NCBI RefSeq assembly: GCF_000143415.4
Contig: NW_003314385.1
Location: forward strand, 91,296 to 155,295
DNA length: 64,000 nt
Reading direction: 5' to 3'
Source: Selaginella moellendorffii
Lineage: Eukaryota; Plantae; Lycopodiophyta
The notes below the pieces were generated by a model, which was not told where the DNA came from, did no database searches, and was given only the letters and a program-made list of their open reading frames with translations. The position numbers and the translations under genes are program-made. Below are positions 17,018 to 45,422 of this stretch, one piece after another. Position 1 is the stretch's first letter. The number at the start of each line of letters is the position of its first letter.

Positions 17018-19000
17018 TCATCTCATCTCATCTAACAACGTCGCCTGCGCAATCACCTGGTTGATCACGCCATCCACAATCTCTCTTCTCAGCTCTCCAA
17101 AGAGTGCCGCAACTTCCTCATGCAGCAGCTGGAGTGACTCGTCACCACATCCGGCAGCCCGGTAAAGAACGCCCATCTTCGACAGCGTCTCGAAGTTCCC
17201 GGGAGCAGTCTCGTGCAGGATTCTCAAGTAGTCGCCAGCGCTTGGAAGCTCCGGATGCTTGAGCACGCAGACCGCAGAGTAACGCTCCACCTGTGCCGCA
17301 CGGATGCAATCCTTCTCCTCGTCGCTGAAACCCCTCGCAGTCATCCTCTTCTCCAAGTCCAAAACTTCGTCGAGGGTCTTCTGCGCGTCACCTCGACGAC
17401 GATCATAGAACTTAAAGCTGGCGACAAGATCCTTGTTCGTCCTCTCCAAGACGCACCGCTTGCAAGAGCACTCAAAGTCGAGGCGCTTGCACTTCACCTC
17501 CCGCGCCGGCAACGGAGCCAAGAGCAGTGGTTCCATGCTCCCAGTCGCCTCGAGATAAGATAGCAGAACCTCGTCACCGGCACTCATGTTCCTGGCAGCC
17601 CGGATGAACATCACGCGTCCGAAGCACACCTTGGAGGCATTGGGAGTGCACGAGTGATTGAAAAAGCCGCTCGAGGCCCAGACTCCGGCGATCCAGGCAT
17701 CTCCGGCCTGGGTGGTGAAGCCGCACCGGTGGCCAACTCGTCTCACTCGCTCGATATCCACCTCCTCAACTTTCGATCCCGGCGGTACCACAACTCTTCC
17801 AATGTTGCACTTGAAGCGATCCAAGTCCGGTACCGTCGTCATCTTGCTCGCGTCCGCCATCGCATAGATGTGGTACCGTGGCCTGCTGGAAGTGCTGCAA
17901 GATCGTATCAGCTCCACGTACAAATCCCTGTCCGCGTTCTCGATCCTCGGAGTCTTCACGTACGCAGTCGGGTTGCAAACGATGAGCAGCTCCCCCCGCC
18001 TTACGTCCCGAGTGAGATACACACCTCTTCCTCGACCGTCCGGAGTCATCCTCAGCTCCAGAGGTCCGAAGTAGTCACTACACTCGGGTTCCACCTTCCG
18101 GCCCAGCACGAAGTCCGTGATATCGTACTCACCGTCCCGGCTCTCCCGCAAGTAAGTCCTGGATCTCTCCAAGTCGATCGAGACGTCAGGCGGAGCGTCC
18201 GGCAGCGCCACAGCCGACCGGAAGCACGGAAGTGCGAGCTCGTGCTCCTGGAGCGCGGTCAGGCTCTTGCCTTTGCACCACAGGCTCCGTGCATGGTGGC
18301 TATCGGACGCCCCCGGGATCTTGGTGGCGGTCTCGGCGTCCACAAAGGCCTCCTCGTACCGTCGCAGCCGGAGCCTCGCCTCGGCTCTCCTGGAGAAGAC
18401 TTGCTTCTCCAAGACACCGTAAGTTGGAGCTCCGCTCTTGGCTCTCATGTCCAGCAGCTCGGTGTAGTACAGCTCGGCCAGCACGTAGCTCCCTCGACTG
18501 AGCAACGCGTTGGCTTCCTTGAGGAGCCTCCCGAGCGGCTTGGCGCTGGCGGCTCTCGCGAGTCCCAGGAACTCCACGGATGCGGGGCTGGAGACTTGCA
18601 GCGCGGACGAGAAGCACAGCGGCTCTTTGATGGCAACTCTGGCATTTGGCGGAAACAAGAGCTCGCCATCTTCCTGCCTCGAGGTGGAGGCGACGGCATT
18701 GAAGACGTGCAGCAGCGCACAGCCGCGGTCGTTTCCACCGTCCTCCTCCTGCTCCACGAGGCACAGCACCGCATTGGCGGCCGGGAGAGCTGCGGAGGTG
18801 CATATCTTAGCATACACTACGCGACCGTGATAGCAAACCTCGCGGCTGAGGCACCGGGTTCCAACGCAGGCGTCCACCATGTCCAGCTTCCTCAGCCCTG
18901 GCAGCGGCGCCGATGAGAGCTTGCATCCATCGCTCATCGCCGTGCCGGTGGCATTGGGCACGGCGGCCTTGAACGCGCGCAGCAGCACCTCCTTATCCAT
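17018..19000 (-). CDS. TPR + SET-domain protein (ATXR1/SDG35-like) with extra N-terminal domain, intronless
   Basis: 660-aa ORF; TPR helices (SRRAEARLRLRRYEEA), GRGRGVYLTRDV, FFNHSCTPN, AARNMSAGDEVLLSY, post-SET FECSCKRC. Confidence 0.85.
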   Translation of the reverse strand: MDKEVLLRAFKAAVPNATGTAMSDGCKLSSAPLPGLRKLDMVDACVGTRCLSREVCYHGRVVYAKICTSAALPAANAVLCLVEQEEDGGNDRGCALLHVFNAVASTSRQEDGELLFPPNARVAIKEPLCFSSALQVSSPASVEFLGLARAASAKPLGRLLKEANALLSRGSYVLAELYYTELLDMRAKSGAPTYGVLEKQVFSRRAEARLRLRRYEEAFVDAETATKIPGASDSHHARSLWCKGKSLTALQEHELALPCFRSAVALPDAPPDVSIDLERSRTYLRESRDGEYDITDFVLGRKVEPECSDYFGPLELRMTPDGRGRGVYLTRDVRRGELLIVCNPTAYVKTPRIENADRDLYVELIRSCSTSSRPRYHIYAMADASKMTTVPDLDRFKCNIGRVVVPPGSKVEEVDIERVRRVGHRCGFTTQAGDAWIAGVWASSGFFNHSCTPNASKVCFGRVMFIRAARNMSAGDEVLLSYLEATGSMEPLLLAPLPAREVKCKRLDFECSCKRCVLERTNKDLVASFKFYDRRRGDAQKTLDEVLDLEKRMTARGFSDEEKDCIRAAQVERYSAVCVLKHPELPSAGDYLRILHETAPGNFETLSKMGVLYRAAGCGDESLQLLHEEVAALFGELRREIVDGVINQVIAQATLLDEMR

Positions 19001-19320
19001 TGCACCCAAGCTCTAGGGTTTATGCCACGTCACACGAAAGCATATTCCCAGGATTTTACCTACATTCTTTTCTCAAGGGGTGAATCTCCATCCGCGACCA
19101 ACGGTCGCAACGGCTACCACGTGTTGTTTGTCTGTTGGCCACAGCAACTAAAGCGTAAGCGTTAATGTGGGTTTTTAGCGCATATTCTGTCGCATTCACA
19201 CACGCAACACTTGAGCTCCTGCCAAGGGAAAAAGGGAGGGACGCAAACGCCCAACGAGCTCCAGTTTTTTTAGGTTTGCGCGTTGCCAAGATCGATCCGG
19301 CTGCGCCGACGGAGGTGTAA

Positions 19321-22145
19321 ATGGCGCCGATCTGGTCGGCGGCGCTGCCACTGCTGCTTCTTCTTCGTCACACCATAGGTAGGCGCGCGCCGGTGATTCT
19401 TTGTTCCTTGATCTCTTCCATAGTTCCGGGGCATAGCATTCCTGCTGCATTCTCATCTTGTTCCAGACTGGTCTCTAACGCCTCCAGGAGAGAGCAGGAT
19501 ATCACGGTGTGGCACTCGATCCGGATCAAGTGGTAGCAGCGCACCGCCGACCTTGGCTGCTTGAGGAAATCGACCAGGGCCACCATCCTCCGGGTGTAGG
19601 ACATCACCCTCCTGGGGTGGGGCATCATCCTCCGGGCGTTGGACACCATCCTCCCGGTGTTGGACACCATCCTCCCGGCGTTGGACATCATCCTCCTGGT
19701 GTCGGTCACCATCTCCCCAAGCGTAAGTCTGATTAGCTTCTCTTGGCAGCAATGTAGATCCACTCATGCGTGAATTCATGCTCTACAGCCTCGTCGCTAG
19801 CTCGGGCATTTGTGGCATTGCAAGCCTGGAAGCGCATGATCTTTCGCGACCCGCTAAACATTACCGGGAGCTGGGTGGGCAGCGAAGTATGTAACTACAG
19901 AGGTGTCTTTTGCGGGCCTTCTCTCCACGACCCTACACTCCGCGTTGTGAGTGGGATGTACGTGTACATGTAGACCATGCTTGCGCGGTATTTCACTGAC
20001 CTTTTGATGCGTTGCTTGTTATTCCAGTGATCTGAATCACGCCAATCTTGGTGGTCAACTCCCCAGTGAACTGGGACTTCTGACCGAGCTCGGTATCTTG
20101 TGAGTGTGGTAAATTCATCCACCGTCCAAGAGTTCTTGCTTATCTTTTTCTTTTCCTTGTCCAGTCATGTGAACAGCAACGAATTTACAGGGGGGCTACC
20201 CGAAAGTCTGAAAAATCTCGTTCTCCTTGGAGAACTGTAAGCATTTGCGGTTTAGCTGTTGGTCTTGACGTTAATATTTTTACAGGGACGTAAGTAACAA
20301 CAAGCTGTCTGGAGTATTTCCTGCTGTTACTCTGCAATTGCCAAGTCTTATATATCTGTAAGTTGACACTTTTTCTTCGATATGATATGTAAGTTTGGTA
20401 CTTTTGCAGGGATATAAGATTCAACCGGTTTTATGGAAGCATACCCGCAGAAATCTTTGATAAGAAGCTGGATGCACTGTAAGTTACTATACTGCAATTA
20501 TCTGAGACAGGACTTGACGTTTGCTGTCTTCAGCTTTGTCAACAACAATAACTTCGGAAATCCTATCCCGGCCAATTTCGGAAACTCTCCAGTTTCTGTT
20601 GTGTACGTGTCCTGTTGCACATTTTTTATGCTAAAACAATTTGTTCTGTTGCTGTCATGCTGTAGGGTCCTCGCCAATAACCAGTTCACTGGAGATATTC
20701 CGAATAGCTTAGGAAGCATGTCGAGGACATTAAATGAAATGTGAGTGACGACGAAATGTCGACCATACTGCGCCTGATCCTTGGAGTTCTATTGCAGAGT
20801 ATTTCTCAACAACAGTCTCGCGGGTGCCCTACCATCAGAAATCGGACTTTTGAATCAAGTATCTGTATTGTAAGATGTTTGTTTTTTGTTTCGAAGTTTC
20901 TAATACCTGCTCCTGTGTGAAGTGACGTGGGCTTCAACAAACTAAGTAGCAGTTTGCCCGACAGCATCGCGAACATGGTTGAGCTGGTTGAATTCAACGT
21001 CGGAAACAATCTCCTCTCCGGAATTCTGACTGACAATGTCTGCAACTTGCCGAAGATAAGAAATCTGTGAGTTTCGCTAAACGGTCTTGTATGTATGTTA
21101 GTAAACCTTTTGTGTGTGCAGGACCTTGTCTAACAACTACTTCATTGGGGAGAGTCCCTCGTGCGCGTCTCTATCAAGACGAGGGTATGCATCGCACTCG
21201 TTCATGTTGTTTTTTGCGTGACGCAATTTGTTTTTGCAGTGTGACGGTAAGTACGAGTGGGAACTGTTTCTCAAGTCAGAGTGGCCAGAAGTCAGGCAAA
21301 GAATGCAGAGATTTCTACGGTAAGCTCGTTAGGAAGTTATGCGGATTGTGCTAACTCTTGTTTTTCTTCTTCTTCTTCGCTCTCAGCTCCACCTCCACCT
21401 TCAGCACCAGCTGCTCCACCGGTGGGAACACCCCCACTATCTCCGACACCTCTCCCTCCTAGCCCGATATTTTTTCCACCTCCAACTCCACTGGCACCAT
21501 TCGGCTCTCCACCTCCACCGTCACCAATCGGCTCTCCTCCACTATCTCCGACACCTCTCCCTCCTAGTCCGATTTTATTTCCACCTCCACCTCCACCGTC
21601 ACCAACCGTTTCTCCTCCTCCAGCATCCTGTCCATCGGGATATAGCAGGGGTCAAAATTCGGGACATTGCTTCCAGCTTGTGAAGCAGCATGCAACCTGG
21701 AGCAATGCCGAGAAATATTGCGCACAACATGGGGGTCACTTGGCAGCAGTGACGGATTTTAACGAACTCAAGGACATCGGCGACTTTTGCAGCCAGGCTC
21801 CCCCGAATCAAGGTAAGCACGTAGACTGTCTCGTTCGATATTTCTAACAGGAATTATCCTCTTGCAGCATTGGTGGATCCTTATAGTCCTAAAGGTCAAG
21901 GATGTTATCTGGGAGGCCAGAAAGCGAACGCCTCCTGGATCTGGCCGAGTTCTCCATGCATCAACTTCAACAGCAGTTACTGGAACTTCTTGGAGCCGAA
22001 TAACTTGTATGGAAACGAAAACTGCACGTCCATAAAGTATGAGCCCCCAATCTTGCGAGCCTCGGCTTCTTCACTAGCATACATGCTCAACGATCTATTC
22101 TGCGAACACGAGCTTCCGTTCGTATGCGCACCAACAAGATGCTGA
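19321..22145 (+). CDS. Secreted LRX-type LRR protein with His/Pro repeat, Pro-rich linker and C-terminal C-type lectin domain
   Basis: Manually spliced open frame: signal-like MAPIWSAALPLLLLL; (HHPPGVG)6; LARAFVALQAWK..DPLNITGSWVGSEVCNYRGVFC; DLNHANLGGQLPSELGLL and further LRRs; NC..QKS..EC; SP-rich region; CTLD CPSGY..WSNAEKYC..GGHLAAV..EPNN..ENC..LNDLFC..FVC. The first intron acceptor is the least certain junction. Confidence 0.85.
19578..19713 (+). repeat. 21-bp coding tandem repeat (HHPPGVG x6)
   Basis: Six units that differ only at third codon positions. Confidence 0.9.
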
Positions 22146-22231
22146 GCCCGAGACTAAAAAGTTACGTTTTATATAAAATACAGCCCGGCCAAGTCCTCCC
22201 AGGTAAACAGAAAGAACACAATCGAAGCGTT

Positions 22232-22912
22232 TTAACTGCTTTCATCTTTTGCAGCATTGGCAGCAACATCACCAGCAGCAGCAGTAGCACGCAGCGCTTT
22301 TCTCAAGCCGAGCACTATAAACAGATTCGTGACTGTAAGGAAGGATTCGGCACCGCCGTGAAGCCAATCAACGTTCGAGAGAGATGTGCCGTAGTGAACT
22401 TTGGCTGCATAGCAACACACAGAGTTCGTCATCAAATCGTGGATATAAGGCTTTCGCATTTGCGAGCGTACCATAGATGCCAGCAGGAACTGTGGTAGCA
22501 CAGAAGCGGTTCCAAAGACGTACATATGTTGCAAGTTAGTTAGATCCACAACCAAAACAAGACGAGAAGACTTACTTGTAGCTGCGACGAATGCGAGTAG
22601 AAAGTAGAAGCCAAAGAGGGTGAGCTGGGGCGCAGTCTTGGACTTGGTAAGGTGATAGAGGAAGCCGAGATACGGGAAGAGCGATGCAGCAAACAGCTGA
22701 GACGCCAGGCTCTGTGAATTGACGCCACCGGGAGACCAAGGATCCACCACAGTCGCAGCAGTAGCAGCGACACTAGAGGCCGCGAGCTCCACCAATTCAG
22801 TAGCACCTGTTGCTGCTGTCAATCTTCCGGGCCTGCGATTGCGAAGACGGCCATTGGGATGCAAACCCGTTGTCGCTGGAGGAGGAGCTCCCGTGAATGC
22901 TATCACCACCAT
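22232..22912 (-). CDS. DUF3593 plastid membrane protein
   Basis: LFAASLFPYLGFLYHLTK..LFGFYFLLAFVAAT|IPAGIY|AKVHYGTSLSNVDWLHGGAESFLTVTNLFIVLGLR; transit-peptide-like N-terminus. Confidence 0.85.
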   Translation of the reverse strand: MVVIAFTGAPPPATTGLHPNGRLRNRRPGRLTAATGATELVELAASSVAATAATVVDPWSPGGVNSQSLASQLFAASLFPYLGFLYHLTKSKTAPQLTLFGFYFLLAFVAATSKSSRLVLVVDLTNLQHMYVFGTASVLPQFLLASMVRSQMRKPYIHDLMTNSVCCYAAKVHYGTSLSNVDWLHGGAESFLTVTNLFIVLGLRKALRATAAAGDVAANAAKDESS

Positions 22913-43979: not shown

Positions 43980-45422
43980 TCAGAAGAATTTAAATTGTAA
44001 ACCAGTTTGGCGCGAACGATTACTCTCGAGAACTTTGTTGATCAAGTCTTTGATCTTCCGAGGCGATACCTTGAAAGCAGCGCGAGCGGCCTGTTTCACC
44101 TGGGCAGCCTTGCTCCTCACAAGTTCGCCCTCGTCAATCACCGCGCGAAAAGCTTGCTCGAAAGCAATTCTCGTGATCAAACCATCTTTTCCATCTTTCG
44201 CCAGCCCCACGCCAATCCCCAAGTGCTCCACGATAATCCGTGCGTTCCCTCGCTGCTCTCCATAAAATGGCATCGTGATCATCGGAACGCCCCGGCTTAA
44301 GCTCTCCATCGTTGAGTTCCATCCGCAGTGGGTCATGAAACCACCCACGGCCCTGTGCGACAGAACCAAGAGCTGTGGTGCCCATTTCCTCACCGCCATT
44401 CCTGTCTTGTTCGTCGTCGCCCGTTCCAGGAATCCTTCCGGAAGTAACTCCTCGGCACCATTGTGCAAAACCCACAGAAATCTCTTCTCGCTTGCTTCCA
44501 ATCCAAGCGCAAGCTCTTCGATTTGTTTCCGGTTAGCGCGAGCGAAGCTTCCAAACGAGATGTACACGACGGACGCGGTGGGCTGCTCGTCCAGCCATGC
44601 CAAGCACTCGACTTTGTCATAGTCTTCACAAGCATTGTCCTCCGCGAAGTAAGAGTCTGGAAGCAAAGGCCCGATATCCACGAAAGGAACCTTGTTGGGA
44701 TTTATCTGGGGGTTCTCGCTCACAGCGATGCATGCCTCCTCCTCGATCGCAGCAAACGTGTTGCACATCACTCCAGCTGCCTCGTGATCTCGAACAGCGT
44801 TTGTCACGTAGAAATCCCGCATGACTTTGGGGACTGTCTCTAAGATCAAGTCGATAACTTGGTCGCTCGAGAGTGGCGAGAGTCCAGCCGAATCTATCCC
44901 GGGTATTCGCACCAGCTCTTGAACTCGTACAGGAAGCTTGTTCTGGTGTAGCATATTCTTGACGTAGAAATGGAAGGCTAGTGCCATTCCCGGCGATGGG
45001 TAGAAGATAATCCTGGGAATGTTGAGCTCGTCTGCTACGTCTTGGGCCCAGGAAGCAAGCAAGTTGTCCGTGATGATGCAGCTTATAGGAGGATTGGCAG
45101 CACTAATGAGCTCCTTAAGTTCTACTCCATCTTCGGGATGGAATCCAAAGGCCCAGCCCATGAGCTCCATCGAGTCGTGCCCTGAGCTCGATTCCTGCTG
45201 CTCTTTGGAAGGGAAGTTTTTCTTGAGCGTCTGGAACTTGATGTGTGGGTTGCATGCTCGTGCTTTGGCCTCTCTCTTCACTTGCTCAAGCCTAAAATCA
45301 TGACAAACGTAGCTTACCTCGAAATCAAGGCCGGCTAGCCTGCTCGCGAGCACCAAAGCTGGGATCATATGCCCTTGAGCTGAATAAGGAACCACCATCA
45401 AGTGAGGGACCTCCTCCTCCAT
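43980..45422 (-). CDS. Family 1 UDP-glycosyltransferase, intronless
   Basis: VPYSAQGHMIP, SVVYISFGS, PSPG box WAPQLLVLSHRAVGGFMTHCGWNSTMESLSRGVPMITMPFYGEQ. Confidence 0.95.
   Translation of the reverse strand: MEEEVPHLMVVPYSAQGHMIPALVLASRLAGLDFEVSYVCHDFRLEQVKREAKARACNPHIKFQTLKKNFPSKEQQESSSGHDSMELMGWAFGFHPEDGVELKELISAANPPISCIITDNLLASWAQDVADELNIPRIIFYPSPGMALAFHFYVKNMLHQNKLPVRVQELVRIPGIDSAGLSPLSSDQVIDLILETVPKVMRDFYVTNAVRDHEAAGVMCNTFAAIEEEACIAVSENPQINPNKVPFVDIGPLLPDSYFAEDNACEDYDKVECLAWLDEQPTASVVYISFGSFARANRKQIEELALGLEASEKRFLWVLHNGAEELLPEGFLERATTNKTGMAVRKWAPQLLVLSHRAVGGFMTHCGWNSTMESLSRGVPMITMPFYGEQRGNARIIVEHLGIGVGLAKDGKDGLITRIAFEQAFRAVIDEGELVRSKAAQVKQAARAAFKVSPRKIKDLINKVLESNRSRQTGLQFKFF

What the first reader, a model, noticed from the sequence alone, without database searches (positions are those of the whole stretch)
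19321..22145. Secreted LRX-type LRR protein fused to an EPN-type C-type lectin domain
Seen: splicing at GT-AG sites gives one stop-free frame from a signal-like peptide through a complete LRX LRR domain and a short Pro-rich linker into a CTLD, with no TM helix or kinase. The CTLD keeps all Ca2+ site-2 ligands (EPN, E of ENC, ND of LND) and the expected cysteines. Established: LRX LRR domains bind RALF peptides and are normally wall-anchored by a long extensin tail; EPN marks mannose/GlcNAc-type specificity in animal CTLDs; in angiosperms CTLDs are known mainly from a single receptor-like kinase. Inference: an undescribed apoplastic adaptor linking peptide sensing to Ca-dependent glycan binding (wall or fungal glycans), collectin-like in logic.
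Basis: partly seen in the sequence, partly recalled or inferred. Interest (0 to 1): 0.9.

Follow-up and report, generated by a model that had tools for sequence, protein, structure and literature searches.

The report
Spikemoss LRX protein ending in lectin
A real, spliced and transcribed Selaginella gene encodes a secreted LRX-type cell-wall protein that ends in a calcium-type (C-type) sugar-binding domain instead of a long extensin tail; the layout was noted in moss in 2016 and has not been studied functionally in any paper I found, so this is a new member in a vascular plant rather than a new kind of protein.

Summary
Window 19321-22145 (+) is a 15-exon gene encoding 647 aa.

The window is Selaginella moellendorffii scaffold GL377689.1. 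The public gene call there has the same span and product length and already carries a Lectin_C hit.

The "undescribed" claim fails. MacAlister et al. 2016 (PMC4738400) reported that four of five Physcomitrella LRX-like proteins end in a C-type lectin domain.

The Selaginella protein belongs to that family:
- Its LRR domain groups with the moss proteins (bootstrap 96 / SH-aLRT 90).
- Its lectin domain is 48-53% identical to theirs.
- It shares the HPPGVG motif and a lost Cys pair.

It lacks the moss C-terminal EGF-like module.

Best reading: a wall-resident RALF-binding LRX whose lectin domain gives calcium-dependent, non-covalent glycan attachment. Binding is untested.

This scan already found the same architecture on another piece of this genome (s1-430237) and reached the same reading.

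Verdict: new member of a known kind; moderate interest.

The parts
19321..22145 (+). Whole coding region of the LRX-CTLD gene (15 exons, 647 aa)
   Evidence: Gene model. All introns are skipped in contigs of 4 runs. An identical public gene call exists at L001:6856-9680.
19321..19378 (+). Exon 1: signal-like peptide MAPIWSAALPLLLLLRHTI(G)
   Evidence: Highest 19-aa hydropathy window of the protein. Moss orthologues begin with typical signal peptides. Intron 1 (19379-19497) is confirmed. No dedicated signal-peptide predictor was available.
19581..19706 (+). Six perfect HHPPGVG heptads (a 21-nt tandem repeat), N-terminal to the LRR cap
   Evidence: TRF reports period 21, 6.4 copies. Among the six units there are 58 synonymous and 0 nonsynonymous pairwise differences. 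Two HPPGVG-type copies occur in all moss family members whose N-terminus is present, and none in 107 other LRR proteins.
19789..21319 (+). LRRNT cap, about 10-11 LRRs and C-terminal cap with 4 conserved Cys (exons 3-13; mostly one LRR per exon, introns in phase 2)
   Evidence: Exon 3 hits only LRX8/PEX1 and LRX2 in the PDB (E 1e-17). The domain is 50-54% identical over about 320 aa to LRX-named proteins. LRX8 F109 and H150 equivalents are F135 and H176.
21387..21628 (+). Pro-rich, Tyr-free linker (81 aa, 51% Pro, one SPPPP and one SPPP), built on a 105-nt tandem duplication
   Evidence: Composition and repeat structure.
21629..21812 (+). CTLD N-terminal half (C495-Q555: beta0/beta1, alpha1, alpha2)
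   Evidence: Lectin_C 20.7 bits; alignments A2 and A3.
21868..22142 (+). CTLD C-terminal half with CYLGG, EPN (21993-22001), E606 (22017-22019) and N630/D631 (22089-22094), ending at C647
   Evidence: Lectin_C 21.3 bits. PDB hits include codakine, CD209-like, mincle and selectins. Alignment A3; coordinates.
22203..22254 (+). Optional 52-nt GT-AG intron in the 3' UTR
   Evidence: Spliced in X2 and X9, retained in X1 and X4.

Best explanation
This is the Selaginella moellendorffii member of a small, old family of LRX-like cell-wall proteins. The family is otherwise known only from mosses. In it, the usual long cross-linkable extensin tail is replaced by a short hydroxyproline-type linker and a C-terminal C-type lectin domain.

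Shown here:
- The gene is real, spliced and transcribed.
- Its LRR domain is LRX-type and keeps the two residues that are needed for RALF4 binding in Arabidopsis LRX8.
- Its C-terminal domain is a CTLD that keeps the EPN/E/ND calcium and sugar-site residues and the canonical disulfide cysteines.

Inferred mechanism: the protein is secreted into the wall. The LRR domain binds the species' RALF peptide. The lectin domain binds a glycan with equatorial 3-/4-OH groups (mannose, glucose or GlcNAc type) in a calcium-dependent way. This gives the LRX-RALF module a reversible, non-covalent hold on wall polymers or wall glycoproteins, in place of Tyr cross-linking.
For: Gene and transcripts.

Organism: an exact protein match whose 90% cluster contains S. 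moellendorffii XP_002993002.2, and scaffold GL377689.1.

LRX identity:
- The N-terminal cap hits only LRX8 and LRX2 in the PDB.
- The LRR domain is 50-54% identical to LRX proteins.
- F135 and H176 correspond to LRX8 F109 and H150, whose double mutation is the paper's interface-targeting LRX8 mutant and failed to rescue the lrx quadruple mutant (PMC7132299).

Family membership:
- The LRR tree groups it with 12 moss LRX-CTLD proteins at 96/90 support.
- The CTLD is 48-53% identical to the moss CTLDs, with two shared insertions.
- The HPPGVG motif and the lost Cys pair are shared.

CTLD:
- Pfam hits.
- The family profile hits animal CTLDs in the PDB at down to 5e-7.
- An AlphaFold model of the Ceratodon orthologue CTLD has pLDDT 90.2.
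- Its best Foldseek matches are sugar-binding CRDs: CL-K1, langerin, Endo180 CRD2, codakine, DC-SIGN, mincle and MR CRD4, with target-normalised TM up to 0.83.
- EPN, E and ND are kept in 13 of 14 family CTLDs; one moss paralogue has QPD instead.

Linker: Tyr-free here and with 0-1 Tyr in the mosses.

Candidate ligand: S. moellendorffii has one RALF gene (PMC5258720).
Against: - No binding of any kind has been measured for any family member.
- The structure model is of the moss orthologue (52.6% identity), and animal CTLDs were in its input alignment.
- WND is LND here, and two family-specific insertions flank the sugar site, so specificity could differ from animal EPN rules.
- The LRX dimer-disulfide Cys is T183 here, and one Cys-tail disulfide is missing, so quaternary structure may differ from LRX2 and LRX8.
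- LRR-to-CTLD transcript continuity rests on overlapping contigs across a repeat.
- Signal-peptide status rests on inspection only.
Confidence: 0.55

Rival explanations
1. Apoplastic pattern-recognition adaptor. The CTLD recognises foreign glycans such as fungal mannan, chitin-derived GlcNAc or glucans. The LRR part couples that recognition to RALF or receptor signalling, with a collectin-like logic.
For: EPN-type CRDs nearest in fold are animal innate-immune lectins: CL-K1, langerin, DC-SIGN, mincle and MR CRD4. The protein is secreted and soluble.
Against: There is no collagen or neck oligomerisation module. The family is small and conserved (4 genes in P. patens, 48-53% CTLD identity between moss and spikemoss). 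It is not expanded or fast-evolving as immune receptors usually are. The rest of the protein is a wall-integrity module. No expression or infection data were examined.
Confidence: 0.15
2. The CTLD is not a lectin here. It is a protein-binding or structural module, as in many animal CTLDs. It might bind a CrRLK1L/LLG-type receptor, another wall protein, or serve as a folded cap for the linker.
For: Many CTLDs bind proteins. WND is replaced by LND. Two family-specific insertions and four extra cysteines are present. The best sequence hits of the family profile in the PDB are snake-venom protein-binding CTLDs, although these hits cover the N-terminal half only.
Against: All five Ca site-2 residues are kept across the moss-lycophyte split. 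One paralogue shows the classical EPN-to-QPD switch, which only makes sense for a sugar site. The best fold matches are sugar-binding CRDs.
Confidence: 0.2
3. Annotation or assembly artefact: two neighbouring genes (an LRR protein and a separate lectin) wrongly joined.
For: No single contig spans 21463-21539. In X1 the 3' contig has a higher mean depth (248.6 against 42.5).
Against: Exon 14 is one open frame running from the linker into the CTLD. The exon 13/14 joint contig runs 75-77 nt into exon 14. The contigs overlap by 30 nt exactly where a 105-nt duplication lies. The X1 3' contig also covers the convergent neighbouring gene, and where it does not the depths are similar (X9: 17.1 against 16.3). 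The moss orthologue P0016 encodes LRR, linker and CTLD in a single intronless ORF.
Confidence: 0.03

Closest known systems
Physcomitrium (Physcomitrella) patens LRX-like extensin chimeras with a C-terminal C-type lectin domain (MacAlister et al. 2016, PMC4738400). Here: P0003, XP_024370173.1, XP_024373216.1, XP_024391105.1, and the Ceratodon purpureus proteins KC19_4G213000 and KC19_1G052900.
   Same: Same domain order. The LRR domain is sister to theirs in the tree (96/90). The CTLD is 48-53% identical with the same 10 cysteines, EPN/E/ND and two shared insertions. The linker is short and Tyr-poor. The N-terminal HPPGVG motif and the missing LRX Cys pair are shared.
   Different: The Selaginella protein ends right after the CTLD and lacks the roughly 50-aa EGF-like Cys-rich tail found in all the moss proteins. 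It has six HHPPGVG units rather than two. Its linker has few SP3-5 motifs (2 against 2-9). Its gene has 14 introns, whereas the Ceratodon gene checked is intronless.
Angiosperm LRX/PEX proteins (Arabidopsis LRX1-11; structures 6QXP for LRX2, 6QWN and 6TME for LRX8)
   Same: LRX-specific N-terminal cap. A collinear LRR domain of 10-11 repeats. Four of the conserved cap/tail cysteines. The RALF-contact residues F and H.
   Different: No long extensin domain and no Tyr cross-link motifs. One Cys-tail disulfide is missing. The dimer-disulfide Cys is Thr. There is an extra N-terminal His/Pro/Gly repeat and a C-terminal CTLD.
Animal Ca-dependent EPN-type carbohydrate-recognition domains (collectin CL-K1, langerin, DC-SIGN, mincle, codakine)
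   Same: CTLD fold (orthologue model; target-normalised TM up to 0.83). Long-form N-terminal hairpin cysteines. EPN, E and ND site-2 residues.
   Different: About 20-26% identity only. WIGL is CYLGG and WND is LND. Two insertions and four extra cysteines are present. There is no collagen, neck or TM context. It is a plant wall protein.
Plant C-type lectin receptor-like kinase (single gene in Arabidopsis, At1g52310 class)
   Same: The only other CTLD context reported in land plants (as cited in PMC4738400).
   Different: That protein has a TM helix and a kinase; this one has neither. No such plant protein appeared among the 11 hits at E<=1e-3 when the C-terminal CTLD half was searched against 1.84 billion representatives.

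Membership tests
LRX (leucine-rich repeat extensin) family | Secretion signal at the N-terminus | tested here: inconclusive
   MAPIWSAALPLLLLLRHTIG is the most hydrophobic 19-aa window of the protein and fits the -3/-1 rule by eye. The moss orthologues have clear signal peptides. No signal-peptide predictor was available.
LRX (leucine-rich repeat extensin) family | LRX-type LRR domain (specific N-cap, about 11 LRRs, C-cap) | tested here: met
   Exon 3 hits only LRX8 and LRX2 in the PDB at E 1e-17. The domain is 50-54% identical over about 320 aa to LRX-named proteins. It falls inside the LRX tree.
LRX (leucine-rich repeat extensin) family | RALF-binding pocket residues (LRX8 F109, H150) | tested here: met
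   F135 and H176 are conserved (residues from PMC7132299). Binding itself was not tested.
LRX (leucine-rich repeat extensin) family | Cys-rich tail with a full disulfide ladder to LRRs 7-11 | tested here: not met
   Of the eight Cys columns conserved in 91 other LRX-like proteins, six are kept (two in the N-cap, four in the C-cap and tail). The LRR8 Cys (97% C) is A304 here, and its tail partner column is absent. The same is true in all 12 moss proteins.
LRX (leucine-rich repeat extensin) family | Long C-terminal extensin domain with many SP3-5 repeats and Tyr cross-link motifs | tested here: not met
   The linker is 81 aa with one SPPPP, one SPPP and no Tyr.
C-type lectin-like domain (Pfam PF00059), Ca-dependent CRD type | Profile match to Lectin_C | tested here: met
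   The halves score 20.7 and 21.3 bits separately against a cut-off of 22.6. The public full-length product has an unmarked Lectin_C hit. The family profile hits PDB CTLDs at down to 5e-7.
C-type lectin-like domain (Pfam PF00059), Ca-dependent CRD type | CTLD fold | tested here: met
   Tested on the Ceratodon orthologue (52.6% identical), not on the window protein. The model has pLDDT 90.2 and pTM 0.88. Foldseek gives 458 or more PDB matches at E<=1e-3, the listed top 50 all C-type lectin domains.
C-type lectin-like domain (Pfam PF00059), Ca-dependent CRD type | Canonical cysteines C0/C0', C1/C4, C2/C3 | tested here: met
   C495/C508, C525/C642 and C608/C634 align with the animal positions. 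Four more cysteines (C548, C568, C586, C647) are family-specific.
C-type lectin-like domain (Pfam PF00059), Ca-dependent CRD type | Ca site-2 / sugar ligands EPN, E, ND | tested here: met
   E598, N600, E606, N630 and D631 occupy the aligned columns.
C-type lectin-like domain (Pfam PF00059), Ca-dependent CRD type | Ca-dependent carbohydrate binding | not testable with these tools
   Needs recombinant protein and glycan arrays with and without Ca.
Moss LRX-CTLD chimeras (MacAlister 2016) | LRX-like LRR, short Tyr-less extensin-like region and C-terminal CTLD in one polypeptide | tested here: met
Moss LRX-CTLD chimeras (MacAlister 2016) | Common descent with the moss proteins | tested here: met
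   The LRR-only tree gives one branch at UFBoot 96 / SH-aLRT 90. CTLD identity is 48-53%. The HPPGVG motif and the lost Cys pair are shared.
Moss LRX-CTLD chimeras (MacAlister 2016) | C-terminal EGF-like Cys-rich module after the CTLD | tested here: not met
   The window protein stops 5 residues after the last CTLD strand (TGA at 22143-22145). All the moss proteins continue for 49-53 aa.
Plant C-type lectin receptor-like kinase | Transmembrane helix and cytoplasmic kinase | tested here: not met
   No internal hydrophobic window. The ORF ends at 22145 and transcripts continue into the 3' UTR.
Collectins | Collagen Gly-X-Y region and coiled-coil neck giving trimers | tested here: not met
   The linker is Pro/Ser-rich without Gly-X-Y periodicity.

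The most novel reading that the evidence does not exclude
The LRX-lectin layout may be the ancestral way land plants tied the RALF-sensing LRX module to the wall. In this reading, a reversible calcium-gated (and perhaps pH-gated, via the conserved His-rich HHPPGVG repeat) lectin grip on wall glycans arose before the moss-vascular plant split. It survives in mosses and lycophytes and was replaced by covalent extensin cross-linking in euphyllophytes. If so, the protein would directly couple apoplastic Ca/pH, RALF and wall polysaccharide status.
Probability: 0.2. Interest if true: 0.7.

Novelty: new member of a known kind. Interest (0 to 1): 0.42.

Why it matters
LRX proteins are central to RALF-based cell-wall integrity sensing, but how the module is held in the wall outside seed plants is unknown. 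C-type lectin domains are very rare in plants and none has a known ligand.

This family is now shown to span mosses and a lycophyte, with the calcium and sugar-site residues intact for more than 400 million years. It offers a tractable way to ask two questions: whether a plant CTLD binds sugar, and whether lectin anchoring can substitute for extensin cross-linking. P. patens has four paralogues and is easy to edit.

It is not a new kind of system. The architecture was noted in passing in 2016, the gene is publicly annotated, and this scan had already found it on another piece of the same genome.

Tried and rejected
- The spliced window protein has no single reference, so I did not paste it into any tool. 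Pfam, PDB and homology searches used exon-wise pieces, and the structure was predicted for the closest moss orthologue. Full-length work was done in scripts.
- The search for homologous proteins with exon 14 found nothing. The profile search A1 did not return the window's own protein, although the gene call exists.
- The look-up of encoding contigs had no record for P0003.
- The first structure run, with only the 15 family rows, gave pLDDT 54 and was discarded. Adding 16 animal CTLD rows gave 90.2.
- Introner-like origin of the 14 introns: rejected, because pairwise intron similarity equals that of shuffled controls.
- A CTLD-only transcript suggested by the higher 3' depth in X1: not supported, because that contig also covers the convergent neighbouring gene.
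- The dimer-disulfide Cys as a family discriminator: rejected, because only 27 of 91 other LRX-like proteins have it.
- Literature searches for LRX plus C-type lectin in Selaginella or other plants found only the 2016 moss paper. Neither the plant-lectin survey (PMC6362431) nor the extensin survey (PMC4769139) mentions it.
Full report
**1. Observation**

Reading 18800-22700 and splicing at GT-AG sites gives 15 exons and a stop-free 1944-nt CDS of 647 aa. Introns are 49-119 nt long.

I laid contigs of four public runs from four studies on 19200-22400. All 14 introns are skipped at exactly the modelled sites. These include 19378/19498, 21319/21387 and 21812/21868. The runs hold about 0.5-0.6 of the sampled words, which matches the exon share of the stretch. 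That fits transcript assemblies, although the runs are only guessed to be RNA.

Contigs break only at 21433-21568, inside the Pro-rich linker. The linker is a 105-nt tandem duplication (21417-21521 and 21522-21626, 81% alike). Neighbouring contigs overlap there by 30 nt, and exon 14 is one open frame running from the linker into the lectin domain.

The depth of the 3' contig is close to that of the LRR contig wherever the 3' contig does not also cover the convergent neighbouring gene (X9: 17.1 against 16.3).

**2. Organism and public annotation**

The window ORF 43983-45422(-) is in the protein collection letter for letter. Its 90% cluster holds S. moellendorffii XP_002993002.2.

The SET-domain ORF 17021-19000(-) places the window on GCA_000143415.2, scaffold GL377689.1. 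The gene called beside it spans 2825 nt and gives a 647-aa product with LRR and Lectin_C hits. That is the same model as mine.

**3. Domains**

- **Residues 1-20:** a hydrophobic signal-like peptide.
- **Residues 48-89:** six perfect HHPPGVG heptads.
- **Residues about 95-413:** the LRR domain.
  - Exon 3 alone hits LRRNT_2.
  - In the whole PDB it hits only LRX8/PEX1 and LRX2, at E 1e-17.
  - The domain is 50-54% identical over about 320 aa to proteins named LRX.
- **Residues 414-494:** an 81-aa linker with 51% Pro, no Tyr, one SPPPP and one SPPP.
- **Residues 495-647:** the C-type lectin domain.
  - Lectin_C scores 20.7 and 21.3 bits for the two exon-encoded halves.
  - The C-terminal half hits codakine, CD209-like, mincle and selectins in the PDB.
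  - In an alignment with animal CTLDs, the canonical cysteines and EPN (E598, N600), E606, N630 and D631 fall in the expected columns.
  - WIGL is CYLGG and WND is LND.
  - There are two insertions (alpha2-beta2 and beta3-beta4) and four extra cysteines.

There is no internal hydrophobic segment and no kinase.

**4. Relatives**

I searched the C-terminal CTLD half against 1.84 billion representative proteins. Only three clusters scored below 1e-10; the remaining eight hits below 1e-3 include multi-CTLD proteins that look animal-type and carry no source name.

One of the three is P. patens P0003 (623 aa), which has the same architecture. Further searches gave 12 full or nearly full moss proteins. 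All members that carry a source name are from Physcomitrium or Ceratodon. All have LRR, SP-rich linker, CTLD and an extra EGF-like Cys module of about 50 aa.

The four P. patens proteins (P0003, XP_024370173.1, XP_024373216.1, XP_024391105.1) match the "four of five" described by MacAlister et al. 2016.

**5. Is the Selaginella gene a member of that family?**

Four independent characters say yes.

1. A maximum-likelihood tree of the LRR domain alone (46 rows, LG+C20+F+G4 by PMSF) puts the window protein and the 12 moss proteins on one side of a branch, with ultrafast bootstrap 96 and SH-aLRT 90. A quick run with 61 rows gave 86. The canonical S. moellendorffii LRX (SELMODRAFT_81544) falls outside the group.
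2. The CTLD is 48-53% identical to the moss CTLDs over about 150 aa, with the same ten cysteines and the same two insertions.
3. Two HPPGVG-type copies are present in every moss member whose N-terminus is present, and in none of 107 other LRR proteins retrieved.
4. One Cys pair that is 97% conserved in 91 other LRX-like proteins is missing in the window protein and in all 12 moss proteins.

The main difference is that the Selaginella protein stops right after the CTLD and lacks the EGF-like tail.

**6. Function-relevant residues**

Moussu et al. 2020 (PMC7132299) describe an interface-targeting LRX8 F109A/H150A mutant that failed to rescue the lrx quadruple mutant. They also showed that C157, Y87 and A133 form the dimer interface.

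By alignment, the window protein has F135 and H176 at the RALF-contact positions. H is invariant in all 103 proteins compared.

The dimer-disulfide position is T183. Only 27 of 91 other LRX-like proteins have Cys there, so this does not discriminate the family.

S. moellendorffii has one RALF gene (PMC5258720).

In the CTLD, EPN, E and ND are kept in 13 of 14 family sequences. One moss paralogue (P0022) has QPD plus SD, which is the classical galactose-type switch.

**7. Structure**

The window CTLD spans two exons and has no single reference, so I modelled the closest orthologue, Ceratodon P0016:436-593 (52.6% identical).

- With family rows only, the model was poor (pLDDT 54).
- With 16 animal CTLD rows added, it reached pLDDT 90.2 and pTM 0.88.
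- The best Foldseek matches in the PDB are Ca-dependent sugar-binding CRDs: CL-K1, langerin, Endo180 CRD2, codakine, DC-SIGN, mincle and mannose-receptor CRD4. E-values are about 3e-8, and target-normalised TM reaches 0.83.
- The ESM Atlas neighbours are Lectin_C clusters.

**8. Mechanism**

Shown:
- a secreted-type, soluble LRX-like protein;
- intact RALF-contact residues;
- an intact Ca/sugar-site signature.

Inferred: the LRR binds RALF. The CTLD binds a mannose/glucose/GlcNAc-type glycan in a Ca-dependent way. This provides non-covalent wall attachment in place of Tyr cross-linked extensin, since the linker has no Tyr.

I give this 0.55. The rivals are foreign-glycan sensing (0.15), a non-lectin protein-binding CTLD (0.2) and an annotation artefact (0.03).

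**9. Novelty**

- The architecture was published for Physcomitrella in 2016, as a remark without functional work.
- I found no paper that mentions it for Selaginella or any vascular plant.
- The gene is publicly called with a Lectin_C hit.
I reached the moss paper and the homologues independently before I saw that note.

The result is therefore a new member of a known kind. Four details are new here:
- the evidence for a single origin;
- the conserved HPPGVG repeat;
- the lost Cys pair;
- the missing EGF tail.

**10. Limits**

- There is no biochemical evidence.
- The structure is for an orthologue.
- No comparison was made with the plant CTL-RLK lectin domain.
- Absence from ferns, liverworts and hornworts rests on one half-domain search.
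- The signal peptide was judged by eye.

Noticed in passing
window 19581-19706: Six HHPPGVG heptads are identical at the protein level, yet they differ at 58 pairwise synonymous and 0 nonsynonymous sites, all at third codon positions. The peptide repeat itself is therefore under purifying selection. Two copies sit at the same place in every moss family member whose N-terminus is present, and none in 107 other LRR proteins. The function is unknown; a His-rich repeat could be a metal or apoplastic-pH sensor, but that is speculation.
   Followed up: partly
window 19958-21239 (introns 3-12); L003:3001-4197; L004:3001-4941: This gene has mostly one LRR per exon (LRR8 and 9 share exon 11), with phase-2 introns at the same repeat position. 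A Ceratodon LRX-CTLD gene and the canonical Selaginella LRX gene are intronless. The introns are no more alike than shuffled controls, so they are not introner copies. Whether this is an ancestral structure with retro-type loss elsewhere, or a gain here, is unresolved.
   Followed up: partly
window 22203-22254: A 52-nt GT-AG intron lies 57 nt downstream of the stop codon. It is spliced in two runs and retained in two others. The 3' UTR overlaps the convergent DUF3593 gene (22232-22912, minus strand).
   Followed up: no
P0022 (moss, unnamed JGI source), CTLD residues 407-559: One moss paralogue has QPD and SD where all others have EPN and ND. In animal CRDs that switch changes specificity from mannose-type to galactose-type.
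   Followed up: no
window 21011, 21752, 22026-22027: Transcript contigs from other runs carry the nonsynonymous variants L348F, T536A and T609A/M. The last removes the N607-C-T glycosylation sequon next to the Ca-site Glu. Two further variants (20828, 22076) are synonymous.
   Followed up: partly
clusters of P0001, P0012, P0015, P0017, P0019, P0020, P0021: Many 193-196-aa CTLD-plus-EGF fragments of the moss proteins are on record. They are probably assembly breaks in the Pro-rich repeat, as in Selaginella, but a short CTLD-only transcript was not excluded.
   Followed up: no
L001 (window about 7000-29000): Neighbouring called genes: ABC transporters, a P450, a protein kinase, DUF3593, a SET-domain protein (17021-19000, minus strand) and a syntaxin. 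Nothing suggests a functional cluster with the LRX-CTLD gene.
   Followed up: no
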